This document shows positions 19,035 through 62,537 of a DNA stretch of 64,000 nucleotides, piece by piece. A program made the position numbers and the translations under genes. This DNA comes from Styela clava. Its lineage: Eukaryota. The stretch covers positions 27,714,001-27,778,000 of the forward strand of contig NC_135250.1 in the NCBI RefSeq assembly GCF_964204865.1, written 5' to 3'. Each line of letters starts with the position of its first letter. Position 1 is the first letter of the stretch. The notes under the pieces were generated by a model. That model was not told the DNA's origin, did no database searches, and saw only the letters and a list, made by a program, of their open reading frames with translations.

Positions 19035-20274
19035 TTATTCGAAAGAAAACTCTTCCAAATCTTCGTCTGTAAAACCACTTTGTGGGTGCCATTGAGGTTG
19101 AAATCCTAAAAGAACAAGTTCAATCGTGAGATACATGTTCCACATTGATTGAGTTTATCAGTACTCCCGTAGTATGTGTACCAGGTTAGGGTTGGGCCTT
19201 AATTTTATTCCAATTTTCCCTATTTTAGTTCTATTACTAGTTCGGTGACTGTCTTGTGTTAGCCAAGTGAATATACCCCCTGCCCATAGGCTTCCGTCCC
19301 TTTACACAACTTGTGTGAAGTAGTCGAAAAAAATAAGTTACCTCCATATTGGTACACACACTCCTTGAGCGCCAGTTTAGCTAACTCAGGCATAAAATAC
19401 TTTACCGGTATAAGAAAGGATATATTTCATTCATGTGTATATATATTTATTCACAACAGCAATATTCCTCGTTTAGTTTTCATTTTCAATATTATGAATG
19501 CTTAATATCTTTTGTACGAGTATTTTTAAAAGAACAAGATGGGCACTCGCTACTCCGAGTTTTCCAATTGCAGACTCACAGTTATATAAAGTTCCTCTAT
19601 TAAAATAACTTACTAGTAAAATGTAGCAGTGGCTAAAACATGGTTCCAATTTAATTTGACTTAACAGTTTTGAAGTCTGACTAAATTACCGATACCTTGG
19701 AGTTCAAAATGATGTTTTCGGGGGTATAAATAATGTCTTCAACACCAGCTTGCAACAACAGATTTCAAATCTATATTTCTGGTCTAAATACCATTTAAAA
19801 CTTTTTTTAGCGAATGTTTTAAATTTCAATAAAAACGAAATATTCTCACTTTTTGTGCCCCATTTCATTGGACGAAAGAAAGTTGTGCGAACTATTCCGC
19901 CACGAATTGTTTCACGAGGTCTTTGAAATGTGTGTCTAAATGGTCGATAAGTTTCTGTTCTTTTGCTGAAAAATTAGAGAAATATAAAATACAGATACGG
20001 CAGAATGAATTAAATTAGCTCATTATTAGAAACCTCATTCTTTTCATCTTCAAAACGAAATGTGCTATTTTAAATTCACAGTTTTCACCGTGATTACGCC
20101 TTTGTTTTTTGAAAACATTAGAAAATAACTAAAATTTCGTATTTCGTGCAAATTAAAAATATATATGAAACCAATAGATATAAAAACTTAAGAGATGTCG
20201 ACCTACCTCCACCACGAAGTTGATGTTTGGATTAGAAGTCCAACAATGCAAATGAATAAAATCATTCCATGCAT
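19035..20274 (-). CDS. Secreted host-defence-like prepropeptide, copy A (84 aa, 3 exons)
   Basis: Exons 20207-20274, 19850-19965, 19035-19105; GT-AG introns in phase 2 and 1. Protein MHGMILFICIVGLLIQTSTS-WWSKRTETYRPFRHTFQRPRETIRGGIVRTTFFRPMKWGTKRFQPQWHPQSGFTDEDLEEFSFE*. TATAAAA about 40 nt upstream of the ATG. Confidence 0.82.
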
Positions 20275-20310
20275 TATTTGGGTTATAATCTAGTTAACAA
20301 AAGAAACCAC

Positions 20311-20317
20311 TTTTATA
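20311..20317 (-). promoter_or_regulatory. Putative TATA box of peptide gene A
   Basis: GCTTATAAAAG on the minus strand. Conserved at 23991-23997 (B), 43968-43974 (E) and 62596-62602 (F); altered in C and D. Confidence 0.6.
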
Positions 20318-21884
20318 AGCTAGTCGTACGGTGCTAAACAATAACATGAAAAATGCATTAGTTTTACCATTGTTTTAACTTCTCAATAATCACTTCTCAA
20401 TTCGCCATAATACTTCATTACTCGTCAACTTTCTCATTTTAAAGTATAAGAAACTAAATATTACTGACCACAACATATTGAATGCGTGCAACACCTCCGA
20501 ATGTCGATGTTTATTAAACATACTCGAACTTTGGGGGCAGGATGACCAAACTTTTTTTTTCCATGTTTTGGTTTCATCGCCTAATATCACGAAGTCTGCG
20601 ATACTTTTGTCTCAGTTTCGTTTGTTATGGAACGTTCTTCATCAATCATGTTGTGAATCGATACAAGCTCATCTCTGTCTTATGTTAGTTGAGAATAATA
20701 TTGAGTCATTTCACGCGCCGTCATTTTACAATATGAACTACATGAAAATTCTGATGTTTTTGTATTCATAAGCAAAGAGTATGACAGAGTCTATTTTTCT
20801 TTGTCGATATCAAAAGCAATGCAATAGTCATAAAACATTACACTTACATCGGCATGGCTTTGGTATCTTTCAAAAAACATCTAAAAACTTTAAAACCTAT
20901 CTTGTGCAAAAAAATATAAAAGACAGTATTCATATACTCCTTCAATCAACGATAGTTACAATCTATTATTCGTGATTGACATTATTTATAGTTTTTAAAG
21001 GGTGAAATGATTCTTTAGAACAGTTTTCAAACGTGCTCTATTTTTAGAACTTTTCAAGTCTCGCGCCCTACCTCGAAAATAACTAGATATTACTAGAATA
21101 ACAGCTGGTATGTCGAAAGTGTGGTTTATTCCAGAAAATACGTTGAAAATGCGTGGGTGGAACGTAAATATATATAAAATATCCAAAATAAGGTGGAAGA
21201 TCAAATCTAACAAATATTTTAATAATTTCACGCCCTTTCAAAAAATTGTTCACGCCCCTTTTTGGTTGGACGCGCCTCACCGTTTGAGAACCACTGCTTT
21301 AGAATGTCGGATTGTCATGTTGGAGAGGTGTTGAGGGAGTACTATGTACCAAGAAGCCATTGAGAGTGTTATATCAACCTTGTGTGACACTTGATTTATC
21401 TGGCGCTAACAGCGACATTTTAGGGTAAATATCGAATGATAATCTAGTCTTGTGGAACTATTTTTGTACAAAAATAAAAGCAATACTTCATGATGTTTGG
21501 AATATTTCATTGAATAATATTGACTATTGCATATGCTGAACAAACTATTCCGGTATTTTAGAAACACGTATGCGTATTTCAAGCAAGGTGTGAAATACCA
21601 ACGGTAATTCAGGTGTTCACAGAATCCAGTACTTTGAGATATCACATGATTGCATTGTGCCCGTTGCGGTGTAAGAGGGTCCGACGTTCCCAATTCCGGT
21701 GCAAAAAAAAACTCGTTTGATAACGAATTTCTATACAGAGACAAACTTCAGCGGATGAAGTCGGCAAATTACATTGTTTTGTTAACATGGTTGAGGTCCC
21801 TATCCTCGAAACGAATTTGCCCAGCTTTAGCTAAAATGAGATCTTCATGTGGCGGAGTCTTCATGTGTATTCAGTTTATTATAT

Positions 21885-22168
21885 TGTTACTTATCGATCT
21901 TTAGATCGGTAAGTATGTTGATAGGTGTTTGTTTGTCTGTTAGATGCACGCGATATCTCACGAACGCGTGGTTGATTCTGCTCCAAATTTTGCATGTGCA
22001 TTCATCATATCTCGGACCAGAAGCCTATTAATTTTGGATTTATTAATTATGTCGTATAATTAGCGAGTTATTAATTAATTAGTGATGGGACACGCGGTGT
22101 CACTATAGAGTCATGAATCGAAACCGCAGTTTCGATCGATAAGTCTTCAGTCTCCGACCGATATTCTT
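21885..22168 (+). mobile_element. Helentron-associated (DINE-1/HINE-like) element
   Basis: Subterminal inverted repeat ACTTATCGATC (21889) and GATCGATAAGT (22134), GTTT/GTCT microsatellite near the 5' end, T-rich flanks. It interrupts a block that is contiguous in the paralog near 25590. Confidence 0.6.
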
Positions 22169-22468
22169 TTCTAAGTATTATCAAGTTACCGTATTTGATC
22201 AGTTTTTGGTGACCTGACTAATTTTCATTCCATTCCTTGGCATTGTAATTAAGTAACTTCTCTTCTGATTTGGTATTTATGCAATTTGCATTTGAATAAC
22301 GAATGTTTCAGTAATGAATGTAATTCCATATTAAACGTTACACAGAGAAGAGACTAAGAATACACAAATGCATAAGAAACACGCACTAGCATTTTGTGTG
22401 TCAACAAAAATCTACTTCAATTTGGATACCAGGTCATTTTGAGTGGCTGCAATTAGTGTTTTAGCTTC

Positions 22469-23932
22469 TTATTCGAATAAAAAATCTTCCAAATCTTCGT
22501 CTGCAGAATCACCTTGGACGTCCCACCTAGATAGGAATCCTGTGTATACAAACGTCAATCGTGAGATACATGTTCTACATTGACTGTCTTTTGCCAACTA
22601 GCTCCGGCCCGAAACACTTTGACAATATGAACATAACATTCCATAGGGGTATATAAATAATGACTATATTAATATTTCTAAGTTCGTTTCTCTATGGGTT
22701 TTCGACTTTATAAATAATGTTTTCCATGAGTATTTTCAAAAGCACAAGATCTATCGAGATGTGCACTCGCTACTTCGACTCCAGATTACTAGGTGATATA
22801 TATGTAACACTGCCTCAATCTCGTAGCTAAAATTATTTATCACTGCACATTAATCCCGTGAAAAGCATTGTTTCAATTTGATTCAACTTCGAAGTTAAAC
22901 ATCTGACTAAACAAATCTGTTCCGCCCCGCACCCTACATCAGGGGAATAAAATTGATACTTTATGAAAATATAAATAAAGACTTTAACACCAGCTAGCAA
23001 CAGACTCTAAATCCAATGTCTGTTAAGAATAGAAAATTGGAATTTTTTTGAGCGACTGTTGTCAATTATCACATTTAACGGATTGTTCTTACCCTTTACA
23101 TCCCATTTCCATGAATGGTAATTGGTTGTCTTTACCCCCCATTTACTTGGACGGAAATAGGTTGTTCTGGAAAAAAAAAAACGGTATGAAATACAGATAT
23201 GGTTCGTTTGTAGAATACATAATTAAGTCTGTCGTGGACAGTGTCGTCTTTACCATTGACCTAGAGGCATCTAGCTCTCTCAATTGTAAAGGTTTCTTCC
23301 AGAATGAAGCCGGTATAAAATGTTACAAAACTGATATTTGTTTAATGTTTTGGGCGGGTTATTATATTTTGTCCCAAATTTTTTAGCGTCCAAAAGATTA
23401 AAACAGAATACGACCGAATCAATAAATTTGTCCAGTTTTAAAAATCGCTACCTCTTCAATCTTGATAACGTAATATGCTATTTTAAAATACCAGTTTACC
23501 GTAATAATGCCATTACGTTTTTGAAAAAAAGAGAAAATATCTCAGCAACAACGAATCTAATACTTGATATATTTATTACTAGTTCGTATCGGTAGACGTA
23601 TTTCATGCAAGTTAAAATAAATTCAATACGTCATATGCAAGAAATGTATATGATGAAGTCACAAGGGTTTCATGACGTCAATATTACTCGAGTTACAAAG
23701 ACTGATTTCTCTGACTGATTTGCGTTTTCATTGTAAGCCACAGTTGAATAATTACAAAAGCTTTCAACCGTTACTAACAAAAATTAGGAAATACATGGAT
23801 TCGACAAAAATATTAAAACTTTAAATACTGTCCTCATAACCCCGATAAGATATCGACCTACCTATACCATGCCGAAGTTGATGTTTGGATTAGAAGTTCA
23901 ACAATGCAAATGAGTAAAATCATTCTATTCAT
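22469..23932 (-). CDS. Secreted host-defence-like prepropeptide, copy B (71 aa, 3 exons)
   Basis: Exons 23862-23932, 23093-23166, 22469-22539; phases conserved. Protein MNRMILLICIVELLIQTSTSA-WYRTTYFRPSKWGVKTTNYHSWKWDVKGFLSRWDVQGDSADEDLEDFLFE*. A Glu in the signal h-region may weaken secretion. Confidence 0.8.
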
Positions 23933-25922
23933 TATGTAGCTTTGGATCTATAAGTTCCTGCAAAATAATCCACTACTTATTTATCTCAACTTTTATAAGC
24001 TAGTCGAATGTAGCTGGACAATTACATAAAAAAATACACTGGTTTTACCACTGATTCTACTGCTTATTAATCAACTCCCAATTTGCCATATATTTTTTTT
24101 AATTCAGTTATCTACTTAGAAGTATACGCATACGAAACAAAATATTACTGGCTACAACATATCTGATGCCTGCAACGCCTCCGAATGTGGATGTTTATTA
24201 AACATAATCGAACTTTAAATCGGGGGCAGAATGATGGAATCGTGTTATTTTTCATGTTTTTGTTTCATTGCGTAATATCCCGAAGTTTACGATACTATCA
24301 TGTCAGTTTCGTTTGTTATGGCAATTACTTCATTAAGCATGTTGTGTATCGATACAAGTTCATCTCTGTCTTATGTTAGTTGGAAGTAATAATGGCGAGT
24401 CATTCCACGCACCGTTATTTTACAATACGAGCGATGGGAAAATCCTGATATTTATGTCTCATTAAGAAAACAGTAGGACAAAAAGTCTATTTATTGTGCT
24501 TTGCCGATATCAAAGGCAATGCAATAGCAATAAAACGTTACGCTTACTTGGGGGAAATATTTCTTTAGAACAGTTCTGAAACTTTTGAAGCCGTGCTCTC
24601 TTTTTTAGAATTTGTCAATTCTAAATAAATATAAATATTTAAAATAAAGAGGTTAAGATAAAATCTAACAAATAATTTAAGTTTATTTTGCTTAACGTCC
24701 CCTCAAAAACGCCAATTTGTATGGCGTGCCCACCGTTTGAGAACCAAAACTGCTTTAGAATGTCAACATAAATAAGTGCCTTTAACGAATGAATAGTAAG
24801 CAATTGCGTAGTCATGCGAAGACGATTTTGCTGATGAGCTGGTTTGGATCTACACAAAAACGTTGGAGAAATATTGGTAGAGTACCATGCACGAAGCAGC
24901 TATTGAGAGTGCTTTATATCATCTTCACTGGACTCACCTATCTACCCATTGTGAAACTTATCCGGCGTTATCAACGACATTTTAAGTTTAATATCGTATA
25001 CCAAACTGATCTCGTAGAGTCAATGATTTTTAAATTAAAATATACTTCATGAATGTTGATGTTTAAAATAAAATAATTATATGGAACAATTGGTATGCAT
25101 ATATTTGTTCGTAAGTACTTGGTATGTTGGCAAGCTTGCTTGGCCTAACGTGCAGCTGAGAAATCACAGACATCGTCACATCCCATCCCCCATGTTGTAA
25201 AATATTGACTAGCATATTATGCTCAACCATCGATTCCGGTATTTCGGAAACACGTATGCGTACTTAGAGCAAGGTGAGAAATCTCAACGGTAAGTAAGGC
25301 GTTCACAAAAGCCAGTACTTCGAGATGTCACATGATTACATTGTGCCTGTTGCAGTGTAACTTGCAGACGTTTCAAATCTTTGCCAAAAAAAAAATTTGT
25401 TTGTTGTCGGATTTCTAAACGGGATTTGACTTTAGCTGATGAAGTCGGCAATTACATTATTTTGGTCACACCGGTTGTGGTCTATATCCTCGACACGAAT
25501 ATACTCAGTGGCAATCGTGCGCCATGTGTTTAGCTTAAATGGAATCTTCATGTGGCAGAGATACTTCATGTGTGTTCATTATATTATATTGTCTAATTAT
25601 TATCAAGTCAACTCATAAAGCCTGCACCGACATGTATCCTATCGCGGTTGGTGACCTGACTAATTTTCATTCCATTCCTTGGCATTGTAATGAAGTAACT
25701 TCTCTTCTGATTTGGTATCTATGCAATTTGCATTTGAATATCGGATGTTTCAGTAATGAATGTATTTCCATATTAAAACATTACACTGAGAAGAGGCTAA
25801 GAATTCACATTGATATAAAAATCCTCCATCAGTATATTCCAGGTCAATGTATTGTCCATACTTTTAATTAGACACAAATTTTTCAGTTCTCTTGGAATGG
25901 CTGCAATTGGTGCTTTAGCTTC

Positions 25923-28476
25923 TTATTTGAAAGCGAACTTTTCCAAATCTTCGGCTGCAGAATCACCTTGGCTTCCTGTGTAATAAAATGTCAATTATGA
26001 GTTACTTGTTCGACGATTACTGTGTTTGGCCAGTTCCTACCCTAAAACACATTCCCAGTAGGAGAAATAATTTCTTTTATTGATATATATATATAAATAT
26101 TCACACTATACGTTCATTTCGCCATTTGTTTTCGACATTGTAAATGCTAAGAATTTTTTAATTAAAGGAGTATTCCCAAAAGTTCGGGATCAAATGAGAT
26201 GGGCACTCGCTTCTTGGAGTTTTTAACTGCATATTGCAGGTGATATATATACCCCTATCTCTTAGCTAAAATTATTCATCCCTGCAAATTAGTGGTATAA
26301 AAAGCATTGTTTTATTTCAATTTAACGTGAAAAAACAGAGTATAATAAAATGAATCTATTCCTACATATACATCAGTTAGACCCCGACATACATCAGTTA
26401 TAATTGATAATTGGTGCCTCAAGGGCGTATAAATAATGTCTTAAATACCAGCTAGTAACAATAGATTTAATTCCCAGTGTTTCTAGTCAATATTCGTGAG
26501 CGCAGGTTGTTGTTTATCAAATTCAGCGGAATGTTCTTACCTTTCCCAACCCATTTCATCGAACGGGCGGGGGCTTTACGGGTAGAAAGTGTTCTTATGA
26601 TGAACTTATCATTCTCATGTGTTTGAAATATGCGCCTGCATGGACGATAAAACTTTGTTCTTGTTCTTTTGCTGAAAAGAAAAACGCTATGAAATACAAA
26701 TATTGTTCAGTGTAGAAAACATAATGTAATCTGTCGTACAAAGTGCCGAATTCACGCTTAGCCTAGGGCAGGGGTCACTAAATTTTTTTGACCACGGCCG
26801 GGGTATGACTCAAAACTGTATTTAAACGGGATGGATGAATATTTTTGTCAGTGCAGTACAATAAAGTCACAAAAGTTGGGAAATCCGTTCAATTTATTCA
26901 ACAATATATATTCTACATTTCTGAAGACTCGAATATTAAATTCTATCTAATTCGCGGAATATAGATCGAGAACATCCTAGGAAACAAATATATATACAAG
27001 ATTTCTATATCTAGACAAATATCCTGAGTTTAGCTGTTATCAAAACGTTGCTGTCATGAATTAGGAATGTTACAAAATCCGCTTTTTTGCGCAAAAAAAT
27101 GTTCGCATCACGTCTGCTGAGTACCGTTACGCCGTGTTGGAATACCGCTCCTAAAAAACGACTACGCACTGCCTGCTGTAGCTTGGAATTCCATGAAATT
27201 TTAACACAATTTAGATAAATTAAACAACTATTATCTATCTATTTAATTTTTTGCATTAGCGCATAAATTTCCCAACATTCGGAGCTTTTAAAAAGTACGC
27301 TCCAGTTATACGTAGTGCAAATTAATTATATTGTCCATGGACACCAATAAAATATTTATTTGCGACGTTCTTTCAGTGGTGTCAATGACCGTTGTCAGAA
27401 TAAAATCCTGAAATAGTCTCAATATTCTATAGATGTGACGCACATGGAAAGATTAGTGATTGATATGTGTTCTTTTTTCTTATTTATTACAGTTCTTATC
27501 AAATAAGTAATACAATCCTTATGGAAAAAATTGACCTGTCGGGCGGTTCTAAAATTCCGATATCTCCGTTGGTAACTTGGTATGAAGTTTAATTTTATTG
27601 TAACATACCTTACGCTTTCAGATTACAGTACTGTTAGCGCAAAATGCACATTCCGCGTTCATTTTAGCCCAATGAACGTAAACAGTTTCGTCGAAAGTGT
27701 CTGAGCGGATGCGAAAATGCCCATTATTACGTCACTTTTGTTGCAGTAGTTTGGTGATCCCTGGCCTAGGGAATCCACGCCTTCTAACTTGTAAAAGTTA
27801 GTTCCAGAATAGAGCCGTTTCAAAATGTCACAAATCTGATATTTGTTCAATGGCCCAGTCAAATTAAAAATTCTTGTTTCAAGTTATTTACCGTTTGAGA
27901 GATTAAAACAAAAAACGTCCAATAAATAAATTTGTCTAATTTGGAGAAATTCTCTTCTCAATCATAAAATCGGAATATTCCATTATAAATCTACAGTTTT
28001 TGGACACCCCGATCGTTTTGCATTTTTGGACACCTTGTTGAAAAGTCGCTTTTCTCTTTGATTACTGAGCCAAAAATTTTAAAATTTCATTTTTAAAATT
28101 TTCAGTTGTTAAAGATGAATTTTCTCTCTAGAAGGCTATTTACTTTTATTCTTTTCAAATATTTCCGTTAGCTCTGTGAGATTCGCCGCCGTAGGACGAC
28201 TTCACCAATAAGTCAATGCACGTGAAACAAATAACTGGCTAATTAATCCAATACCCGACATGGACTTATGGCAGGACGAGTGGCCTTGGTTCGCCATATG
28301 ATTAAGTGACCTTATCGACTTTCCTCGACTTATGTAAAAACTTAACCTATCCTATTTCTAATAACTCAATAAACATTTTTAGTATTAGTAATTTTGTCAA
28401 ATATATCGACCTACCTCCACCACCATGAAGTTGGTGTTTTGATTAGAAGTCCAACAATGCAAATGAGTAAAATCAT
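25923..28476 (-). CDS. Secreted host-defence-like prepropeptide, copy C (81 aa from second Met)
   Basis: Exons 28415-28476, 26541-26671, 25923-25975. Protein MILLICIVGLLIKTPTS-WWWSKRTRTKFYRPCRRIFQTHENDKFIIRTLSTRKAPARSMKWVGKGSQGDSAAEDLEKFAFK*. The ancestral ATG is now TTG and the TATA box is altered. Intron 1 carries a 1-kb hAT MITE. Confidence 0.68.
26769..27763. mobile_element. hAT (Charlie-like) MITE in intron 1 of copy C
   Basis: TIRs CAGGGGTCACTAAA and TTTGGTGATCCCTG. Perfect 8-bp TSD GCCTAGGG at 26761-26768 and 27764-27771. Paralogous introns lack it. Confidence 0.88.
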
Positions 28477-31368: not shown

Positions 31369-31467
31369 CTATTGCACATTTTTGGACTCTTGATTCGAAA
31401 TATAATTATATAGCAAAACTGGTGTAAAACAAAAAATCACGATTACTAGTGAATACATCATCATATT

Positions 31468-32174: not shown

Positions 32175-33113
32175 CTGTTGAAACCCATGTCATTGATTGG
32201 GAGGAGGAGGCTGTTCTGGTAAATCCATACCCCTATTCCCGGGATGTGTTTGAAATCTGTACCGGCATGCACGATAAAACGTTTTGAACTTTTTGCTGAA
32301 GAATAAAAACGTTATGATATACAGATATTGTTCATTGTAGAACACATTATGAAGTCTGTCGTGAACAGTGCCTGATTTACCCTTAGGCTGGGGGAATCCA
32401 CGCCCTCTAAATTGTAAAGGTTCGTTCCAGAGTATCGCCGGTTTAAAATGTAAAATGTAAATAAAACTAATATTCGTTTTATGTTTTAGTCAGGTTAGGA
32501 ATTCTTGTCATGAAATACTCAACGCTCAAAAAATTAAAACAAAAATACGATCAAATAAATAATTTTGTGAAACGATACTTTTTGAATCTTGATAACCTAA
32601 TCTGCTATTTTAAATTGACAGTTTTTACCGTTATATTGTTATTTTTTATTTTGCCTTAATTTTTTTTTTTAAATATGGAAAAATATATCGGCGATAGAGT
32701 ATCTAAAAATTAGTATATTCATTGCTATATCTGATCTATAAATCCGTTTATTTCTAATAATGCAAAGAACGGGTAATATTGACATCAGGTTTTCTGGTGA
32801 TGTTTTTTTTACATTTTCGATTTTTGGCGGTTTTTAAATTCAACTTGCTATCAAATCTTCTTGTGTGATAATGGTATTATCATGCTTGTAAAATTCCGCG
32901 AGTTAAAATTAAATTTATGACGCCATATAAAGATGTAATTTTTCTGACGTCATTTTCAACCAAGCTATTCGTAAATATAGCGACGGGTTCGACACCAATA
33001 TGAAATTTTTATTACTGGCTTCATAACCCCGATAAGATATCGACCTACCTCCATCATGAAGTTGATGTTTGGATTAGAAGTCCAATGTAAATGAATAAAA
33101 TTATTCTATGCAT
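32175..33113 (-). pseudogene. Prepropeptide family copy D (pseudogene)
   Basis: Exon 1 at 33049-33113 reads MHRIILFIYIGLLIQTSTS*W (TGG changed to TGA). Exon 2 at 32175-32295 is 121 nt and frameshifted (KKFKTFYRACRYRFQTHP.../..TRTASSSQSMTWVST). Exon 3 is absent: intron 2 joins upstream-type sequence near 32010. Confidence 0.8.
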
Positions 33114-42642: not shown

Positions 42643-43909
42643 TTATTCAAAAGAAAAATCTTTCCAATCTTCGTCTGCAGTATCACTTTGGACATCCCAC
42701 CAAGATAGGCCGAGACCGTCGTCACCTGTGTAAATAAACGTCAATCATTGGGACTCGCTACTTCGTACTTCGACTCCGAAGTGATATATAAGTAACACTG
42801 CTTCAATCTCTCAGCTAAAATTATTTATCACTGTTCATTATTCATGTGACTTTTCATTGTTTTAATTTAACTAAACAAATCTGTTCCGCCCCGGACCCGA
42901 CATCCCGGGAGTAAAATTGATACTTTATATAAATATAAACAATGTCATCAACACCAGCTAGCAACAACAGACTTTAAATCGAATCTAAATGTCTGGTAAA
43001 AATAAAATATGGCATTTTCTGAGCGACTGTTGTCAATTATTAAATTTAGCCGTTTGTTATTACCTTTTACATCCCATCCCATTAAACGGGTATAGGTTGT
43101 CACGGGGGGTCCGCTGAAAAATAAAAACATTTTGAAATACAGATATATAATGCTCGTTTTTAGAACACATAATGAAGTCTGTCGTGGACAGTGTCGGATT
43201 TAAAACATAACAACCTGGTGGCCCACACCTTCTAAATTGTAAAGGTTCCTTCCAGAATGAAGCCGGTTTAAAATGTTACAAAATGATATTTGTTTAATGT
43301 TTTAGTCAAGTTTTTAATTCTTGTCCCAAATTATTGAGCGTTCAGAAAATTGAAACAAAAATATGGCCAAATGAATAAATTTGTCTAATTTTGAGAACGC
43401 CCCTTCTTTGATCTTATTAACGTTACTTGCTATTATAAAATCACAGTTCACCGTCATTTTTTTGAAAAGATAAGAGAATATCTCAGCAACAACCAATCTA
43501 GGAATTAGTATATTTAAATTTAATACTATTTCTATTGCACCACTGATTACCCTGCTCGGGATCGCACGTTCAATTCCCTCGGGGAATAAATTTGTACAAG
43601 TGGATTGCTGGATTTCTCGCCGTCATAGCGTCGTGCGGTTCATCAACAAGTCCATATTCATAAAACAAATAAATGCCTGGCTGATTAAATAATACCCGAC
43701 ATGGACAGGTAACCAGACGAGTGGCGTGGTTCGTCATATGCCTGAGCCGCCTTTAGGAAATACAGCAATGGAATCAACAAAAATATCAATACTTCAAATA
43801 ATGGTCTCATTAATGGTCACCCCGATGAGATATCGACCTACCTAAACCATAAATTTGATGTTCGGATTAGAAGTCCAACAATGCAAATGAGTAAAATCCT
43901 TCCATGCAT
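42643..43909 (-). CDS. Secreted prepropeptide, copy E (66 aa, 3 exons; near-neutral core)
   Basis: Exons 43842-43909, 43064-43113, 42643-42725. Protein MHGRILLICIVGLLIRTSNL-WFSGPPVTTYTRLMGWDVKGDDGLGLSWWDVQSDTADEDWKDFSFE*. Confidence 0.75.
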
Positions 43910-48509: not shown

Positions 48510-48527
48510 GTTTTTCAAATATTTCAG

Positions 48528-48588
48528 CTCGTCTCTTGCAACTACGTCTCTTGCAACCCGTCTCTTGCAGCCCGTCTCTTGCAACTAC
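48528..48588 (+). repeat. Four ~14-bp tandem repeats (CGTCTCTTGCAAC) just upstream of the X1 ATG
   Basis: Four copies in X1 versus a single copy at the equivalent X2 position near 55224. Confidence 0.8.
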
Positions 48589-48957
48589 ACCGAAGAACTT
48601 ATATGGTAATCCCAAGGTATCAATTTGAAAACGTAAATGTCGGGCAAGGCAACAGTTGTTACGTTGCATTCATCAGAGTACCCATGTATCTATACTCTTT
48701 ATTACGTGTACTAAAGCGATGAATTTTACTTGCCAAATGCAGATTAGTAATTGTAAAGTACGCTCTATGTTGATTGGTAATATGTCGAATCACTTCCTCG
48801 TGCACAAACGATCACCTTCAACAGTTTACTAAGGTTCGTTATTTGAAATCATGATCTGACTAATGTAATTCAATGATTGAGATCGAATCTTCCAACAAAA
48901 TTTTGAATTGGAAGTATTGCTCATTTAGTTCCTGAACGCTTTGGATATTTTTAATTT

Positions 48958-49160
48958 GGTTCCATTACACTTGAACCCACGTAAATTTGAACCCATGACA
49001 ATTGCACCTGTATGCTATTGCACCTATGGAATTTTTTTTGTTTCACGGATAGTTAAACCCATACTAACCCTAACCCATGGGTTTTAGCACCCGCATATAG
49101 ATTGAACCCGTGGATATACGCATGGGTTCAAATGTACATGGGTTCAAATGTACGGTCACC
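48958..49160. mobile_element. MULE-like MITE upstream of X1
   Basis: GG...CC ends with repeated TTGAACCCA motifs. 9-bp TSD TTTTAATTT at 48949-48957 and 49161-49169. The empty site is visible upstream of X2 near 55600. Confidence 0.85.
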
Positions 49161-54400: not shown

Positions 54401-55200
54401 AGTGTGAATATCCGCTGCTCTTCTGAAAAATACAATTTAAAAATGACTATTTAAACTATATTTTCATGTTCATATACGGCTGGATGATCATGAAACTTCA
54501 TTTCATCATTTTTAAAAAGTTTATCAAAATCAGAATTTTCTTATATTTTACATCATTCTGTTGATTATTATTCATGTTGAAATTATTTTTCATTGTATTG
54601 GATGCTTTATTTGTATCAATTTTTTTTTAATTTAATCAAAGGATATAGAAATGTTTACCTTACACTTGCTCGAAGTTCGGGTTTGGAACAAGAATCAACA
54701 TTAAACTGACCCAGACCGATAGCTTGGTGAAGTATTGCTGTCACTATCGGTGAACAAAAATGAAGATTAGTTACGTTGAAAATTTTTCCCGGAACTGACA
54801 AGCCGTAAATCCGTTTTGAGGGGTTTGAGTTTCGAATACGCGATATATAATATTAAAGATGACTTCGTTAAGTATATGTACAATTATATGCATTTCAAAA
54901 GTCAACTATCTCACTTAGTACTAATTAGTTAGATCCTCGTTAAAAAAAGGCAAGTTATAAAACGTTGAAGTCCCGAATTTCTAAAAGACTAAACCCTCGA
55001 TGAATTTCTATAATTCATATCACTCACTCGTAAAAGTTTTGGAATTATATAAATTTGAAAGAACTCAACGAATTTATTCCTTGTACGTAGTGAAGTAAAC
55101 AACATCTATCCACTGATATACATTATTGAAAATCCCTAATAAAAACGATATGAACAAATTACTCACCGATAAGTGACAATAACCGCGCGAAGAGATGCAT
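51411..55200 (-). CDS. Type I membrane protein X2 (344 aa): same CUB-like ectodomain, different stalk/TM/tail
   Basis: Exons 55167-55200, 54659-54743, 54277-54422, 53914-54144, 53039-53264, 51411-51723 total 1035 nt in frame. Exons 1-4 have the same lengths as in X1 (34/85/146/231). TM IIVISTIVLGILLVIAVIIIIVLV; tail has IYEN, GYELP, GYEPT, PYHDI and a terminal Y. Confidence 0.8.
51806..52644. mobile_element. hAT-like MITE in the last intron of X2
   Basis: Ends CAGGGTCGGCCAA and TTGGACGATCCTG. TSD gcctaagc/gacgaagc (6 of 8). The empty site gcctgagc is in X3 near 58818. Confidence 0.75.
53575..53800 (-). pseudogene. Diverged tandem duplicate of receptor exon 4 (exon 4') inside X2 intron 4
   Basis: Reads TELRDSQPNDCFIFTSK / VSNDSITDGCARIFPYIIIEGNIFTINITYKTEDGFYDHFQDFRIPSIYVKTSSK with a phase-1 GT donor and a 1-nt frameshift in an A-run. 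The counterpart in X3 is at about 59705-59905. Confidence 0.65.
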
Positions 55201-55875
55201 GTTTTCTCAAATATGTCAGCTCCCGTCCTTTGCAACTACACCGAAGAACTATATGGTTATCCCAAGGTATAAAATTTGAAAACGTGAAACTTTGCCAAGC
55301 CAACAGTTGTTAACGCATGCGTTCATCAGAGTATTTATGTATCTACTCTTTTATTACGTGTACTGAAGCGATGAATATGTCTTGCCAAATGCAGATACGT
55401 AATTGTAAAGTACGCTTTTTGTTAATCGGCAATGTGTGATATCATTTCCTTGTGCACAGACGATCACCTGCAACAGTTTACTAAGGTTGTTAATTTGTAA
55501 TCAGGATCTGACTAATGTAATTCAATGATTGAGATCGAATCTTCCGAACAAAATTTTGAATTGGAAATATTGCTAATTTAGTTCCTGAACACTTAGGATA
55601 TTTTTAATTTACTCAGATTACTCTTCACCCATTATGTATTTTGAAAGTGAATTGGCCAAATTATGAACAATGCTATGAAACAAGAGAGCGATGGTCAAAT
55701 ATATGGTCACGAAATTGTACGGGTATGCAATTTGTCACATTTCGGCACGGTATTGCAGTTGAGCACAAATTTTAACTTACGCAAAGGTGAAACCACCACA
55801 ACGAGCGCAATTTTTAATTTCGATGACGTCATTGCACACAAAAAAACAAATCTCTTAGAGGCCACACATATTTTT
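54230..55875 (+). repeat. Segmental duplication of ~47535-49430 (exons 1-3 and upstream region of X1 and X2)
   Basis: Collinear introns, exons and 5' flank. Confidence 0.85.
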
Positions 55876-58018
55876 GAGAAAGAGCATAGCCCAAATATGT
55901 GGACGCAAAGGTCGGGCATTGGTACTGGTACTGAAAGGCTCAAGCTTAGCAGGGTATTGACTGGAAGATCGCCGGACAAGCGTGGCGGAATGAAGTCTCA
56001 CTAGCACAACCATCTGTTCGATGTTTGGGCATATCCACTTGGTATATCACCTTCATAAAACGAATATATAGATACAATTACTAACTGCAGTACCTATGCA
56101 AACTAAACTAAAATTAGCATTCAGCTGAACAGTGAACATCAGCGGTGTCAAATGCCACGTGGTCGCGCAATATTTGTGATAATAAAGAGACATTGGATGA
56201 AATGTGGAACCTAACAAGGCTCGAAGGATATTTGAAAAAATGTAAAAGTAATTCTCTCCTGGAAACTACTACCACCTTTATGTCATCAAGATTTGAAATT
56301 GATTGGTCCATTGGTTTTGTTCATAATAATTTCAGGTGTAAATATTTCTTACGATTTGTTTTAGTCTTGTTGCTGCATTTTGATTTGTGTCTGTATCAGG
56401 CAACGCATTTTCTGATGAGACTCGGTAGTGTTTTAATTTTGATTATTTGTTTAATATTTACTCATCTTATTGATATTCAAACAAAAGAATTCCGAAGTTT
56501 TTTTGGGTTTATTGGTATTGAATTATTTTTCAATCCTATACGATATTTCTTTTCCAACCGCAGACTTTCCCATTTTATAAAAATTAAACGTTGGTGAACT
56601 TGTGTTTGCGATGTTACACCATAGATTTAGACGTCTAGGACCACATGCCGTATGCCAAATCGTTAGCAAACGATCTTTCTCTGGTGGTGTAATCTTGTTT
56701 AAACTTTGGAAGCCTAATCAATCAAGCCAACAAAAATTATAATTCTATATCTAAGAACATACCTACAGACACATTAGTTAATTGATAATGATTTTGCCAT
56801 GAACCCACACTAATATGTTTCAATATTTTTTTTTAATTTATACATTTATAACTTGTCTCAGAAATTCTATCAGAAAGAATAGCACATTTAAGCAGAATTT
56901 TACAAATAACATGCTAATAAGATAAAAAGATAAAAAACCTGTCTTTATAACCTGTAATTTTGTCATTATGTTCTGAGCAATAAGCACCTCAATTGTCTCG
57001 TCAACGTAATCAGAAATTGAAACCATGACAACAAAAAACTTTATCGTAAATTGAGAAGTCACGCAGGAAAAATAAACGATCTATTACATCCTGTTTGCTG
57101 TACTCTTGTATTTCTCATCCTCAATTTCTATTAATAAAATTAATTCCTTAATAAATTATGTCCATGCTTTCCAATAATTGTTTATTATAAAGTTGCTCTT
57201 TAAGTATCTATAAATTTTAATTCAGATCCGGGAAAGAAAGGACGATATGCCGCACTATTATTTCATATCAAATATAAAAATCGCTTTGCAACTAGAACTC
57301 CACAATTGTAGTTAAGTCAGCATTGCAGACAAGCATTTAATATGCGATTGAAATAATCTTAATCTGAACGTTATAGTTTGGTCTTACAATAGCGATTACA
57401 AGTTATATTTCATTCTTTCAGTATCTATTTCATATAGATGAATCTATATAAAAAAAAATAAAAAAGTTTGAATTAAATTGAAAATGTATACAGCAATTTA
57501 CTTAAAAAATTGTTTAGGCCTAAACCCGTTTTTTCTTGATGTATATCAAATATATATTGATAACCCACTATACTTTCCTAAAATCTCTCTATGTCTACTT
57601 TAGACATTTAACTTGGCTCATTTAAATTTCATGTTGAATGAGAACAAATATTGAATAAAAAGGCCAAATAAAATACACGAAATAGTAAATGAACATCAAA
57701 TAGACTCTAAAATTCGTATTAAGAAAAAAGGGGGTACTACCGTAGTATGTGCATCAATATGGCGTACACCGGAACGTAGTATGTGTATAAAGTTAGGGTC
57801 AGTTCATAATTTCAGGTACAAATACTACGGGAGTCACTTGGCTAGTCCCCGAACTCATAATAGAACTGAAATAAGAGAAATCGGAATAAAATTATGGCCT
57901 AACCCTAACCTGTTACACATACTATGTTCAGGTGTCCACCATATTGTTGCACATACCACAGGAAAGCCAAAAATGGAGTCTTAACTCAGGTTGCTAAAGT
58001 TATCTGTTAAATATATGT

Positions 58019-58272
58019 GCTGGTATCAGTGGGCCACCCTCTATTGTCGTTAAATATAACGTCACTTAAGCGTGCAAATACCGCGTCATTGGAGCCTGTA
58101 GTGTCAACCTTAATTAAATCGACTGAACAGATGATGCGAGTGCGACAACATCAAGAGTGGTAACGATTTGACACTTATGAAGCACCATCTGTTCTGTCGA
58201 ATATATAAGTCCATAAACCGAAAAAGTGACGTTATATTAAACGACAATAGAGGGTGGCCCACTGATACCAGC
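58019..58272. mobile_element. Small MITE with ~50-bp TIRs
   Basis: GCTGGTATCAGTGGGCCACCCTCTATTGTCGTT.AATATAACGTCACTT and its reverse complement. Flanked by ATATGT on both sides. The empty site is in the paralog near 51250. Confidence 0.85.
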
Positions 58273-58427
58273 ATATGTATGCTCATTTTTTTGTTATACT
58301 CTATTATAGCAAGGTATGACCACTTAATCAGGAATGACTATACTCTATCCTGTTTAGTCACGAGTAGTCAGTGACATGAAGAGGAACTGAAATTAATGTT
58401 CAACAAATAAACAGGAATAAGGTGAAG

Positions 58428-60030
58428 TCAATATTCAATATCATGATACGGGTGAAAATTTGTCGGTTCTTATCCAGATGATCCATCTAGTTGTTGCAAT
58501 GAATCGCTCGTCAAGTATTTAATCTGATCTCTTGGATCGGGATGAGAAGTCATTGCAGAATGCTCGAGACGAATAGGCAATTCGTATCCAGAGGTTGCGG
58601 TTTGTATTGCTATTTGTATTTCACCGTTCACGACGTTGTTCTCATATATTCCGAGATCACATTCAAACTGAGCTTTTGGCATATTTTTCATACTCGGTTT
58701 CATATTCTTCGGGGTAGTAGTTGTATTCCTGTTGTTTTTCATTCTAAAATTAAAAAAAAATGTATGCATTTTCAAGCTTCGGTAGTATCTCAATTTCTTG
58801 CAGGTAGCTATTACGGCGCCTGAGCCTTGGAGATACAACGCTGATGCAAATATTTAAAATATGCACACGGAAGCAAAATAGACAAGAAAGGAATTTGATG
58901 TCTTTTGATACTTGGAATGATTTTGACCCACTGCTACCGATCCCTGTCGTCGTACTAACAACTCAACTATTTTCAAATCAGCCTAAGATAATTAGTCTTC
59001 AACACAGTTGATATTGATCAAAACAGAAAATACAATTTTTAAAACTGCTATGCCGATATGTAATACCAATCATCATATGGGCATCAGAAAGCGGGCAGAG
59101 TCCGAGAAATGTCCATGTTTGTGCAATGTTTATTCAGCATCCAATAGGTATTTGAATCTTACCTGGTAACAAGGACAATAATGATGATCACTGCAACAAC
59201 GAGAAAAATGCCAAGTACAATAGTGGAGATGAAGAAGAATTTCTCATTTTCTTTGCAAAAGTCGTCACTACTTGTAGTTGGTTTTGTTATTTTCTCAACT
59301 CCAGTTTGTTCAAACGACGCAGTTGTGGCTTCATTTGTGAGCAGGTGCCTGTTGCCTTCAGTAGTTGTATTTTTATCATCTTGATGAGCTTAAAATTTCT
59401 ATAATTCACTATATTTAAATAACAACAATCATTACAACATTCACAATTCCAATATTGACAGCATTAACGTTTATGAAATAAAAACCACACGACATTCAAT
59501 TTTAATTTTGTTCTAATTAATTGTTTTTCTAAAATATGTCGGAATTTAATATAGCTCAAAAATGTGCCAAGTTATTTTGTTTATATTGTATAAAAGCAAT
59601 AACTAGGTCTTGCTAATGAATGACCGCTCATAAGATCATAACTATGCAGTTCGATCCAAATTACAATAAATTCCAAATTTATCATTGGCGTATTTGTTTT
59701 AACTTTGTTGCTTGTTTTCGCATAAATTGAGCAAATGCAAAATGATCATAGAAACCATCCGCTGTCCCATAAGTTATATTTATTGTAAATATATTGCCTT
59801 CGATGATATCCTAGCACGTCCATTGGTAATAGAATCATTACATTTATTTTTTGAAGTAAAAAGGAAACAGTTGTTTGTTTGGGAATCACAAAATTCTGTG
59901 CTGATTGAATAAGCATTTTGTACAAATAAATTGATAAACATTGAATACAATACGAAGAACTTAAGTCGAACGAGACTAATTTCTTTTGCATATACCTAAT
60001 TTGTTGCTTTTACCCGTGTTGTTAAATATC
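58428..60030 (-). pseudogene. Receptor X3, 5'-truncated paralog of X2
   Basis: Retains only the last ~18 nt of exon 4 (60014-60030), the stalk/TM exon (about 59163-59389) and the tail exon (58428-58743). The GYEPT Tyr codon has become TAA at 58470-58472. Exons 1-3 are absent. Confidence 0.72.
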
Positions 60031-61240
60031 TCGTATAACTGTTTCAATATCTGACTAGGACCGGTGATGGGACTACGAGGCCGTGGTTAGTCATATAGTC
60101 AAAAACTGGCTCCGTGCCTTCTTATTTTTGAGACATAAATATGAAATACCTTGTCTCTTTCATGTCGTATCCATGCCTCCAATGAATCCAAGCCAAATAG
60201 GCTATTTGAATAGTAAACTGCAGATATTTGAATATTTTGCTAGCACTAATCAGTAACCAGTAAATAATTATTAACTTGATTAATTTTATGTTACCGAAAT
60301 AATATTGCGTTTTAGGTAATATGTAAATTCTTTTGAAATCAGCTTGGCTGGTATTAAAGTTTGGTACAAACGTTTCCGACCCGTAATGAATTTCATCATG
60401 TGGAAGTGGCCCGTGAGACGAAAAAGGTTGGGCAGGCCTGTTGTGAGGAGTTGCTAGAAGGGTATTTTCTGAAATTTTGTTGAGCTCTGTGGTTGGGCTC
60501 GAATTTGTTATGCTTTGAATATGAAACCTCCGTGTCATCTGAGCATTGAATTTTAGTTTTTATAGAATCTTATTGTTGATGCAAAAAATATTACAATACA
60601 CGTACTAAGGTAACTAAGCCATATTGCTAAGTACTGTAATGGCAAAACAATAGTGATGAGGCTGTATATGGAGTTTGTCGGCTTGGCTGATGGCGACATT
60701 TAGGTAACCGTGATAAAAATGTTATGAAATTAAATGAATTAAGATGATCAATTTAGAAAGCTTGGACCGACTTGCTAATGTAGGTGACGACGTGAATGTC
60801 TTCCATTACATTCCTTCTAGGCATTGTATGATGTAAATTCTCTTCTTATTTGATATCTATGAAATGTGCGTTTGAATAGCGAATGTTGCAGTAATTTGCA
60901 AGATGTTTTACAGGTTGGTTTTAAAATCTAGCCTGGGCTGTAGCTGTATAATTATTATCAAGTCAACTCATAGAGCCTGCACGGACATGTATGCTATTTC
61001 AATTGATGAGCTGATTGTCTTCCCTTACATTCCCTCTAGGCATCATCTATGCAATTTGCGTTCGAATACCAATTGTTTCAGTAATGAATGTATTTCCAAA
61101 TTTAAACGTTACACAGAAAAGAGGCTAAGAATTCGCATTTCCATCAGTATATCAAATGTCAATGTATTGTACATATTTTTATTAATTAGACACAAAATTT
61201 TCAGTTCTTTTGGAGTGGCTGCAATTGGTGTCTCAGCTTC

Positions 61241-62537
61241 TTATTCAAAAGAAAAATCTTTCAAATCTTCGTCTGCAGTATCACCTTGGACGTTCCACCG
61301 AGATAGGCCGAGACCGTCCACACCTGTGTATATAAACGTCAATCATGTGGACTCGCTATCTCGTACTTCGACTCCAGATTATTAGGTGATATATATGTAA
61401 CACTGCCTCAATCTCGTAGCTAAAATTATTTATCACTGCACATTAATCACGTGAAAAGCATTGTTTCAATTTGATTCAACTTCGAAGTTAAACATCTGAC
61501 TAAACAAATCTGTTCCGCCCCGCACCCCACATCAGGGGAATAAAATTGATACTTTATGGAAATACAAATAAATAATTTAACACCAGCTAGCAACAGCAAC
61601 AGACTCTAAATCCAATCTAAATGTCTGTTAAGAATAAAACAATTGGAATTTCACTGAGCGACTGTTGTCAATTATCACATTTTGCGGATTTTTCTTACCC
61701 TTTACACCCCATTTCCATGGATGGTCTTTGGTTGTCTTTACCCCCCATTTACTTGGACGGTAATAGGTTGTTCTGAAAAATAAAAACGCTATGAAATACA
61801 GATATGGCTCGTTTGTAGAACGCATAATGAAGTCTGTCGTGGACAGTGGCGGATTTAACATTAGCCTGGTGGCCCACACCTTCTAAATTGTAAAGGTTTC
61901 TTCCAGAATGAAGCCGGTAATTAAAATGTTACAAAAATGTTATTTGTTTAATGTTTTAGTCAGGTTTTTAATTCTTGTCCCAAATTATAGAGCGTTCAAA
62001 AAATTGAAACAAAAATATGGCCAAATGGATAAATTTGTCTAATTTTGAGAACGTTCCCTCTTTGATCTTAATAACGTAACTTGCCATATTAAAATCACAG
62101 TTCACAGTTCACCGTAGAATATCTCAGCAACAACGAATCTAGGAATTAGTATATTTATCACTATTACTATCGCGCCACTGATTACCCTGCTTGGGATCGC
62201 AGGTTCGATTCCGTCGGGGAATAAATTTGTACAAGTGGATTGCTGGATTTCTCGCCGTCGTAGCGTCGTACGGTTCATCAACAAGTCCATACCGATAAAA
62301 CAAATAAATGCCTGGCTGATTGAATAATACCCGACATGGACAGGTAACCAGACGAGTGGCGTGGTTCGCCATATGCTTGAGCCTCATTAGGGAAATACAG
62401 CAAGCGAATCAACAAAAATATCAAAACTTTAAATAATGGTCTCATACCCCCGATGAGATATCGACCTACCTATACCATGAAGTTGATGTTCGGATTAGAA
62501 GTCCAACGATGCAAATGAGTAAAATCCTTCCTTGCAT
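61241..62537 (-). CDS. Secreted host-defence-like prepropeptide, copy F (74 aa, 3 exons)
   Basis: Exons 62470-62537, 61699-61772, 61241-61323. Protein MQGRILLICIVGLLIRTSTS-WYRTTYYRPSKWGVKTTKDHPWKWGVKGVDGLGLSRWNVQGDTADEDLKDFSFE*. Exon 2 is visible inside ORF 61628..61879. Confidence 0.82.
62165..62385 (+). mobile_element. Truncated SINE-like repeat in intron 1 of peptide genes
   Basis: Contains a B-box-like GGTTCGATTCC followed by ggattgctgga..tcgccg..taatacccgacatggac..gacgag..ggttcgccatatg. Related copies at about 43535-43752, 28175-28330 and 34872-35150. Confidence 0.5.

What the first reader, a model, noticed from the sequence alone, without database searches (positions are those of the whole stretch)
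19035..62537. Hidden tandem family of six 3-exon genes encoding styelin-like host-defence prepropeptides with unfamiliar Trp/Arg/Lys/Tyr-rich cores
Seen: six paralogs (A 19035-20274, B 22469-23932, C 25923-28476, D pseudogene 32175-33113, E 42643-43909, F 61241-62537). Each exon is 50-131 nt, so ORF finding misses them. All share intron phases 2 and 1, an AG|GTAGGT donor, and the layout signal peptide, Trp-starting core, acidic tail. Hand-counted core charge is about +10 (A), +12 (C) and +6 (F), against -6 in the last 10 residues of A. Established: ascidian antimicrobial peptides (styelins, clavanins, Ciona MAM/PAP) are made as signal + cationic peptide + anionic C-terminal extension. Inference: this is a probably unannotated antimicrobial or haemocyte peptide family whose cores match no peptide I recognise.
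Basis: partly seen in the sequence, partly recalled or inferred. Interest (0 to 1): 0.92.

Follow-up and report, generated by a model that had tools for sequence, protein, structure and literature searches.

The report
New secreted cationic peptide gene family
The sea squirt Styela clava carries an apparently unannotated cluster of 15 tiny three-exon genes for secreted, Trp/Tyr/Arg/Lys-rich peptides with an acidic tail; at least one is spliced as predicted, and they look like new host-defence peptides, though that role is untested.

Summary
Six minus-strand paralogs lie at the stated coordinates. Each has three short coding exons, intron phases 2 and 1, and an AG|GTAGGT first donor. The layout is a signal-like exon 1, a variable basic and aromatic exon 2, and a conserved acidic exon 3. 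The hand-counted charges are right: +10 (A), +12 (C), +6 (F), and -6 for A's tail.

The organism is Styela clava. The family has 15 loci, 11 intact and 4 broken. All lie on one strand within 211 kb of chromosome piece C1, and 9 are beyond the window.

Gene A is transcribed. Assembled contigs from two independent studies lie on it as three pieces joined at the predicted junctions.

No exon matches Pfam. Searches of billions of predicted proteins, PDB sequences and the literature found no relative.

"Styelin-like" applies only to the precursor layout. The cores lack the styelin KHK motif and show no amphipathic helix signal. Clavanin genes in this genome have two coding exons, not three.

Exon 2 is built from a 36-nt (12-codon) unit present in one to three copies.

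From gene E onward the peptide genes alternate with a receptor-like gene family.

A host-defence role is plausible but untested. Other first readers of this scan noted "styelin-like" clusters elsewhere in this genome; my searches found no shared exons with this family.

The parts
20207..20274 (-). Gene A exon 1 (CDS): 22 codons plus 2 nt. Signal-like peptide ending TSTS followed by WW. Donor AG|GTAGGT, phase 2.
   Evidence: The junction at 20207 to 19965 is present in contigs X2 rec17 and X7 rec23.
20275..20333 (-). Gene A 5' UTR, with no upstream ATG. It ends directly after a tgtttAG acceptor at 20335-20334, a possible spliced-leader trans-splice site (inferred).
   Evidence: Contig ends at 20333 (X2) and 20335 plus 20 unaligned letters (X7). 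Sequence.
19850..19965 (-). Gene A exon 2, 116 nt: the Arg/Thr/Phe/Pro-rich basic core (core as a whole: net +10).
   Evidence: Covered with 0 mismatches by X2 and X7 contigs and by X10 rec10. Single copy in the genome.
19035..19105 (-). Gene A exon 3 (CDS): acidic tail, net -6, ending at stop TAA.
18981..19034 (-). Gene A 3' UTR. The contig ends at a CA about 15 nt after AATGTAAA. The poly(A) site is inferred.
23862..23932 (-). Gene B exon 1 (signal-like).
   Evidence: Only faint depth in run X2.
23093..23166 (-). Gene B exon 2, 74 nt: two 12-codon repeat units.
   Evidence: (period 36, 23094-23165).
22469..22539 (-). Gene B exon 3, acidic tail (-7).
28415..28476 (-). Gene C exon 1. The usual first ATG is lost, so translation starts at the second Met.
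26541..26671 (-). Gene C exon 2, 131 nt: the most basic core (+12). The only core with an amphipathic-helix signal (z = 2.6).
25923..25975 (-). Gene C exon 3, short tail (-2).
33049..33113 (-). Pseudogene D exon 1, with an in-frame TGA at the first Trp codon.
   Evidence: 1 TGA.
32175..32295 (-). Pseudogene D exon 2 relic, frameshifted. No exon 3 follows.
43842..43909 (-). Gene E exon 1 (signal-like, with Leu at the expected -1 position).
43064..43113 (-). Gene E exon 2, 50 nt: one repeat unit. Core net charge only +1.
42643..42725 (-). Gene E exon 3, long acidic tail (-8).
62470..62537 (-). Gene F exon 1 (signal-like).
61699..61772 (-). Gene F exon 2, 74 nt: two 12-codon repeat units. Core +6, contains a WKW motif.
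   Evidence: (period 36, 61700-61771).
61241..61323 (-). Gene F exon 3, acidic tail (-5).

Best explanation
This is a lineage-restricted, tandemly amplified family of small secreted-peptide precursor genes in Styela clava. There are 15 loci, 11 of them intact, encoding products of 66-84 aa.

Each coding exon encodes one module:
- Exon 1 gives a cleavable signal peptide.
- Exon 2 gives a variable peptide rich in Trp, Tyr, Phe, Arg and Lys. It is built around a 12-residue unit of the type TTYYRPSKWGVK, present one to three times or preceded by a unique basic stretch.
- Exon 3 gives a conserved acidic tail with the ADEDL..F.FE motif.

Shown here: the genes, their structure, their confinement to one cluster, the splicing of gene A, and the absence of any detectable relative.

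Inferred: the product enters the secretory pathway and the signal is removed before the N-terminal Trp. The acidic tail neutralises the basic core during storage. The tail is then cut off at the exon 2/3 junction, where the split codon is Gly or Arg directly after a Lys (K-G or K-R). The released basic aromatic peptide acts as a host-defence effector. It is probably an extended, non-helical membrane- or surface-active peptide. Its Trp, Tyr and Lys residues may be modified as in styelin D.
For: Structure and copy number.

Transcription and exact splicing of A: contigs X2 rec17 (360 nt) and X7 rec23 (410 nt), from two studies, lie as 18989/18981-19104, 19849-19965 and 20207-20333/20335. Depth over the non-repeat intron bins is near zero. 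Exon 2 of A is single copy, so no retrocopy explains the contigs.

Organism: Styela clava, from a 100% match of the neighbouring CAS-family gene.

Signal-like exon 1: a hydrophobic run with a 9-residue Kyte-Doolittle mean of 3.1-3.8, followed by a polar T-S-T-S stretch.

Charges: cores +4 to +12 in 10 of 11 genes, tails -2 to -8.

Evolution resembles that of an immune-effector family:
- In distant pairs exon 1 is 88-95% identical, introns about 60% and exon 2 45-59%.
- E and F are 91-93% identical in the 5' flank, exon 1 and intron 1 but 56% in exon 2.
- pN/pS is about 1.2 in the core of the five youngest copies. B and F differ by 5 non-synonymous and 0 synonymous changes in exon 2.
- Four pseudogenes indicate birth and death.
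- Exon 2 length changes in 36-nt steps.

Context from papers: S. clava haemocytes make other linear peptide antibiotics, the styelins and clavanins. Styelin D carries bromo-Trp, DOPA and hydroxylated Lys and Arg (PMC10608444, PMC9966394). That both are made as signal + cationic peptide + acidic extension is my reading of the clavanin gene ORFs in this genome and my own recollection for styelins.
Against: - No functional, tissue or induction data exist.
- Only A has clear transcript support. B has faint depth only. The other genes were not tested.
- Several cores are only mildly basic and contain acidic residues. E is +1.
- There is no amphipathic moment above shuffled controls, except in C. 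No structure is predicted for A's core. The classic helical pore-forming mechanism is therefore unlikely.
- pN/pS near or above 1 in young copies could equally mean relaxed constraint.
- The signal peptide was judged by heuristics, not by SignalP.
- Cleavage of the tail is inferred from the junction residues only.
Confidence: 0.55

Rival explanations
1. The genes encode precursors of post-translationally modified aromatic peptides (DOPA or TOPA, halogenated Tyr or Trp). These would be used for tunic cross-linking, wound plugging, adhesion or metal binding rather than for killing microbes. The 12-residue Tyr/Lys/Pro/Thr repeat would act like the short repeats of marine adhesive proteins.
For: - Cores are 17-28% aromatic, with YY pairs, Lys, Pro and Thr, in tandem 12-residue units.
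- The propeptide is nearly neutral overall in the repeat-type copies.
- Tunicate holdfasts contain 1.5-2 kDa DOPA-rich peptides, and tunicate blood cells hold polyphenolic peptides (PMC13079984).
- Styelin D shows that S. clava has the modifying enzymes (PMC10608444).
Against: - The reported holdfast peptides are about 50 mol% catecholic residues plus Glu/Gln, Ser and Gly. That is unlike these Lys/Arg/Thr/Trp-rich units.
- Subfamily A/C/O has long non-repeat Arg-rich cores (+8 to +12) that look more like antimicrobial peptides.
- There is no data on modification or tissue.
Confidence: 0.15
2. The peptides are secreted ligands, or decoys, for the receptor-like membrane proteins whose genes alternate with them. 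The two families would have been co-amplified as ligand-receptor modules for immune or self/non-self recognition.
For: - From gene E onward every peptide gene is followed by 1-4 copies of a receptor-like ectodomain exon on the same strand.
- Of 43 matches to that exon, 40 lie at C1:27.585-27.950 Mb.
- ORFs of those genes show a transmembrane segment and Tyr-containing cytoplasmic motifs.
- Tandem units containing both gene types are duplicated.
Against: - Interleaving follows automatically from segmental duplication of a unit that holds both genes, so it shows no functional link.
- Genes A-D form a peptide-only sub-array.
- No binding test was run and no co-variation was analysed.
- A further group of receptor-like copies at 27.585-27.618 Mb has no peptide genes among it.
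Confidence: 0.08
3. The locus is transcribed but most copies make no functional peptide. On this view they are young, decaying duplicates, and the conserved exons reflect recent duplication and gene conversion rather than selection.
For: - Four of 15 copies are broken.
- pN/pS is about 1 or higher in the core and tail of the youngest copies.
- E has an atypical signal end and a core charge of +1.
- Transcript evidence exists for A only.
Against: - Distant paralogs with introns saturated at about 60% identity still keep exon 1 at 88-95% and exon 3 at 72-82%. They also keep intact frames, phases and splice sites.
- Eleven open frames are retained.
- In A's mRNA the first AUG opens the 84-codon frame.
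Confidence: 0.12

Closest known systems
Styelins A-E (Styela clava haemocyte antimicrobial peptides, cecropin-like)
   Same: Same species. The overall precursor plan is the same: signal peptide directly followed by a basic aromatic peptide, then an acidic C-terminal extension. The residues that are modified in styelin D (Trp, Tyr, Lys, Arg) are abundant here.
   Different: There is no KHK motif and the cores do not start with Gly-Trp. Ten of eleven cores show no amphipathic helix. The cores are Thr/Pro/Gly-containing 12-residue repeats or Arg-rich stretches. The tail and signal profiles detect no other locus in the genome. I could not locate the styelin genes themselves, so their exon structure was not compared.
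Clavanins and clavaspirin (Pfam PF05452)
   Same: Same species. Small secreted precursors with a C-terminal acidic extension after a Gly.
   Different: No exon scores against PF05452. The clavanin genes at C1:10.54 and 10.57 Mb have two coding exons, with the peptide and extension in one exon. The family here has three coding exons. BLASTP of the tails gives E = 3.3. The cores are not His-rich.
Amphibian preprodermaseptin-type and similar antimicrobial peptide gene families (from general knowledge)
   Same: A strongly conserved signal and acidic pro-region flank a hypervariable mature peptide. Tandem multigene family with rapid diversification.
   Different: Unrelated sequences. Here the acidic region is C-terminal to the peptide. 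Each module is a separate exon. The variable exon changes by gain and loss of a 36-nt unit.
Trp/Arg-rich and Pro/Arg-rich extended antimicrobial peptides such as indolicidin, tritrpticin and PR-39 (from general knowledge)
   Same: Non-helical, aromatic and basic composition. A WKW motif occurs in B and F. Recurrent Arg-Pro occurs in A.
   Different: The resemblance is in composition only, with no sequence homology. The cores here are two to four times longer, rich in Thr and less basic per residue.

Membership tests
Styelins | Mature peptide similar in sequence to styelins, including the conserved KHK motif (PMC9966394). | tested here: not met
   None of the 11 intact products contains KHK. 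The profile and protein searches return nothing named styelin.
Styelins | Linear amphipathic alpha-helical cationic core (PMC10608444). | tested here: not met
   The maximum hydrophobic moment at 100 degrees is within shuffled controls for 10 of 11 cores; only C reaches z = 2.6. AlphaFold2 gives no secondary structure for A's core, pLDDT 58 (single sequence, weak evidence).
Styelins | Precursor made of signal peptide, then basic peptide, then acidic C-terminal extension. | tested here: met
   signal-like 17-20 residues, cores +1 to +12, tails -2 to -8.
Styelins | Detectable homology of the signal or pro-region, or shared gene structure, with styelin genes. | tested here: inconclusive
   Signal and tail profiles hit only the 15 or 14 loci of this cluster in the whole genome. 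A degenerate pattern for the styelin core did not locate the styelin genes, so no direct comparison was possible.
Styelins | Made in haemocytes and microbicidal. | not testable with these tools
   The tissue of the RNA runs is coded and no activity assay is available.
Clavanins (PF05452) | Match to the Pfam clavanin model. | tested here: not met
   There were no Pfam matches for any exon at E <= 10. The same model finds the true clavanin genes in this genome at 118-120 bits.
Clavanins (PF05452) | Two coding exons, with peptide plus extension in one exon (as seen in this genome). | tested here: not met
   compared with the three-exon, phase 2 / phase 1 structure here.
Gene-encoded cationic host-defence peptide precursors (general class) | N-terminal signal peptide. 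| tested here: inconclusive
   The heuristics fit: a hydrophobic run with Kyte-Doolittle mean 3.1-3.8 and small residues at -1 and -3 in 10 of 11 genes. No SignalP-type predictor was available.
Gene-encoded cationic host-defence peptide precursors (general class) | Net positive mature region paired with an anionic pro-region. | tested here: met
   E is the exception, with a core charge of +1.
Gene-encoded cationic host-defence peptide precursors (general class) | Multigene family with conserved signal and pro-region and a fast-evolving mature region. | tested here: met
Gene-encoded cationic host-defence peptide precursors (general class) | Antimicrobial activity of the released peptide. | not testable with these tools
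   This needs synthesis or purification and MIC assays.

The most novel reading that the evidence does not exclude
The peptide genes and the interleaved receptor-like genes form co-amplified, co-diversifying ligand-receptor modules. That would be a previously unseen recognition system, for immunity or self/non-self, in a tunicate. The hypervariable exon-2 peptide would be the ligand and the paired activating/inhibitory-type membrane proteins its receptors.
Probability: 0.08. Interest if true: 0.85.

Novelty: new variant of a known kind. Interest (0 to 1): 0.55.

Why it matters
Styela clava is the species in which tunicate peptide antibiotics were first found. Reviews up to 2026 still list only clavanins, clavaspirin and styelins for it.

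A third, sequence-unrelated family of 15 genes has apparently been missed by annotation because every exon is 50-131 nt. If confirmed, it would enlarge the known effector repertoire of the closest invertebrate relatives of vertebrates. It would also offer new non-helical Trp/Tyr/Arg/Lys scaffolds to test, possibly heavily modified ones.

The one-module-per-exon design is a clean example of how a peptide family diversifies. The variable exon grows and shrinks by a 36-nt unit, and exons are exchanged between paralogs.

The strict alternation with a receptor-like gene family is unexplained and worth a direct test.

Tried and rejected
- **Pfam:** eight exon translations gave nothing at E <= 10.
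- **5.8-billion-protein search:** I queried A's and C's exon 2, given as stop-free genomic frames by reference. No candidate was found.
- **HMM of B/F/G-type exon 2 against 1.84 billion representatives:** 0 hits.
- **PDB sequences:** 0 hits.
- **ESM Atlas:** no usable hit.
- **AlphaFold2 of A's core alone:** no structure.
- **Weak exon-1 profile hits on C5 (E 0.25-0.66, seven copies):** these are a 10-12-residue match inside a repeated element, directly preceded by a stop codon. Rejected.
- **Degenerate DNA pattern for the styelin KHK region:** it found only unrelated frames, and the control counts were as high as the real ones. The styelin genes were therefore not located.
- **Rfam and tRNA scans of the window:** nothing.
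- **Halogenated-DOPA holdfast peptides of tunicates:** their composition does not fit this family.
- **Left out:** I did not search with, look up or fold any joined (spliced) protein. All searches were exon by exon, by reference. An exact look-up of the full products in public annotation was therefore not done.


Full report
**What is there**

Reading the six stated intervals on the minus strand shows the same start in each. An ATG opens a hydrophobic 20-23-codon frame that ends in AG|GTAGGT. Each interval ends in an acidic frame that stops at TAA.

A BLASTN search of genes A and F against the window finds exon 1 six times (82-89% identity) and exon 3 five times. All copies are in the same orientation.

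I enumerated acceptor-donor pairs compatible with a phase-2 then a phase-1 intron. In each gene this gives one candidate exon 2 with a long polypyrimidine tract and a GTAAG/GTGAG/GTAAT donor: A 19965-19850, B 23166-23093, C 26671-26541, E 43113-43064 and F 61772-61699.

D has TGA in place of the first Trp codon, a frameshifted exon 2, and no exon 3.

The products are 84, 71, 81, 66 and 74 aa. Core charges are +10, +5, +12, +1 and +6. Tail charges are -6, -7, -2, -8 and -5.

**Is it expressed?**

Only one run search and one read-laying run were allowed, so I laid four runs guessed to be RNA on 18700-24300, which covers genes A and B.

Two assembled contigs from different studies each lie on gene A as three abutting pieces:
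- X2 record 17, 360 nt: 18989-19104, 19849-19965, 20207-20333.
- X7 record 23, 410 nt: 18981-19104, 19849-19965, 20207-20335.

These are the predicted exons. The 1-nt offset at intron 2 is an alignment ambiguity, because the same G stands on both sides. A third run (X10) has a contig over exon 2.

Depth over the non-repeat intron bins is zero or under 1. Exon 2 of A occurs once in the genome. The contigs therefore come from spliced RNA, not from DNA or a retrocopy.

The 5' UTR has no upstream ATG. The contigs stop right after a tgtttAG at 20335-20334, which looks like a trans-splice acceptor. At the 3' end they stop at a CA at 18981. Both of these readings are inferences.

B shows only faint depth of 1-5. 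C, E, F and the copies outside the window were not tested.

**Organism and extent**

The 807-aa single-exon ORF at 7505-9925 is a CAS-family scaffold protein. It is 100% identical to the Styela clava entry "enhancer of filamentation 1-like".

The window is C1:27,714,001-27,778,000 of a 377-Mb assembly. Exon-1 DNA finds 15 copies, all on the minus strand, between 27.734 and 27.945 Mb. A protein profile of exon 1 finds the same 15. Exon-3 DNA and an exon-3 profile find 14, all in the cluster.

I fetched the nine copies outside the window and modelled them:
- Five are near-identical 76-aa genes whose exon 2 (110 nt) holds three 12-codon units.
- One (L024) is an 80-aa gene of the A/C type with two Cys.
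- Three are broken. L018 has a stop in exon 2 and has lost its tail stop. L021 has a 7-nt deletion in exon 1 and mutated splice sites. In L023 no exon 2 was found.

Together with D this makes 11 intact and 4 broken genes.

**Anatomy of the variable exon**

Tandem Repeats Finder reports a 36-nt period inside exon 2 of B, F and the three-unit copies.

The unit encodes about TTYYRPSKWGVK. E has one unit, B and F have two, and the 76-aa genes have three. A, C and L024 keep only the last unit, which ends in KWG.K or KWDVK. In those three it is preceded by a unique Arg/Lys-rich stretch.

The codon split by intron 2 is Gly or Arg directly after Lys, giving K-G or K-R exactly at the boundary between core and tail. 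This is my basis for inferring that the tail is removed there.

**Evolution**

- In distant pairs (A-F, A-C, A-L024) exon 1 is 88-95% identical. Introns and flanks are about 50-68%, exon 2 is 45-59% and exon 3 is 72-82%.
- E and F are 91-93% identical in the 5' flank, exon 1 and intron 1, and 92% in exon 3, but only 56% in exon 2.
- B and F are 93% and 90% identical in exon 2 and intron 2, but 68-73% upstream. The genes are therefore mosaics made by recombination or conversion.
- Among the five youngest copies pS is about 0.05, like their introns. pN/pS is 0.65 in the signal, 1.19 in the core and 2.44 in the tail.
- B and F differ by five non-synonymous and no synonymous changes in exon 2.

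The counts are small. They fit diversifying selection on the core but do not exclude relaxed constraint.

**Comparison with what is known**

- No exon hits Pfam.
- A's and C's cores have no candidate among 5.8 billion proteins. The collection does hold the neighbouring S. clava CAS protein, so part of the species' annotated proteome is there.
- A profile of the repeat-type cores finds nothing among 1.84 billion representatives.
- PDB sequences and the ESM Atlas give nothing.
- The Pfam clavanin model finds the true clavanin genes at C1:10.54 and 10.57 Mb. They have two coding exons, with peptide and acidic extension in one exon. The structure is different and the tails are not similar.
- Styelins are described as 31-32-residue, Phe-rich, linear helical peptides with a conserved KHK motif (PMC9966394, PMC10608444).
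- None of the 11 cores has KHK. Ten show no helical or beta hydrophobic moment above shuffles. AlphaFold2 predicts no structure for A's core.
- I could not locate the styelin genes. The tail profile finds no other locus in the genome even at E <= 10, which gives no support to a shared tail.
- Reviews to 2026 list only clavanins, clavaspirin and styelins for this species.

**Surroundings**

From gene E onward each peptide gene is followed by one to four copies of a receptor-like gene on the same strand. Of 43 matches to its ectodomain exon, 40 lie at C1:27.585-27.950 Mb. ORFs show a transmembrane segment and Tyr-containing tails. Units with both gene types are duplicated. A-D form a peptide-only sub-array.

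Interleaving follows from segmental duplication and proves no functional link. I keep the ligand-receptor reading as a low-probability novel case.

**Verdict**

The genes are real and appear unannotated, and at least gene A is expressed. The precursor plan is the one used by known S. clava peptide antibiotics, but the family is unrelated in sequence and gene structure. Its cores are not helical amphipaths.

The most likely role is host defence by an extended basic aromatic peptide released from an acid-neutralised precursor (about 0.55). Rivals are a modified structural or adhesive peptide (0.15), mostly non-functional young duplicates (0.12), and ligands for the neighbouring receptors (0.08).

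**Limits**

I searched exon by exon, by reference. 

Noticed in passing
window 45700-60100 (minus strand) and C1:27.585-27.950 Mb: A receptor-like gene family alternates with the peptide genes. It has an ectodomain exon (for example 46812-47246), a transmembrane exon (53035-53289) and a Tyr-motif tail exon (51411-51722). Of 43 genome matches to the ectodomain exon, 40 lie in this region of C1 and 3 weak ones on C6. Two tandem copies lie between E and F.
   Followed up: partly
window 19160-19380 and 21880-22250; also 2491-2690, 3020-3220, 16188-16250, 34181-34354, 37307-37388, 57844-57924: A short interspersed repeat lies in intron 2 of gene A and between A and B. In the RNA-type runs about a hundred contigs at 90-95% identity pile up on it, with summed depth in the tens of thousands. 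It has no Rfam or tRNA match.
   Followed up: partly
window 20333-20340: Gene A transcripts end at 20333 directly after tgtttAG. One contig carries 20 further unaligned letters. This looks like a spliced-leader trans-splice acceptor. The loose letters could not be read.
   Followed up: no
window 7502-9925 (minus): A single-exon 807-aa CAS-family scaffold gene (SH3, Ser-rich and CAS_C domains). It is 100% identical to the S. clava protein 'enhancer of filamentation 1-like', which identifies the organism.
   Followed up: yes
window 19040-19041: The contig of run X7 carries two adjacent changes that turn the last residue of gene A's tail from Glu to Lys, as in gene C. This is an allele or strain difference.
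   Followed up: no
window 10720-11157; 44482-44724; 62914-63189; 63429-63761: Minisatellites are present. One has a 63/132-nt period near 11 kb. Others have 83-96-nt periods just upstream of genes E and F, and those two arrays are related to each other.
   Followed up: no
L025 and L026 (G000:C1:10,574,701-10,574,874 and 10,538,311-10,538,484): Two clavanin genes lie 36 kb apart, each with a signal exon about 1.1 kb upstream of the exon that holds the peptide, a Gly and the acidic extension.
   Followed up: partly
G000:C5:10.575-10.834 Mb (L043-L045): A repeated element with at least seven copies contains a 30-36-nt stretch reading VGLLIQTSNS, flanked by AG and GT. It resembles the end of the family's signal peptide. 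I judged it a chance match.
   Followed up: partly
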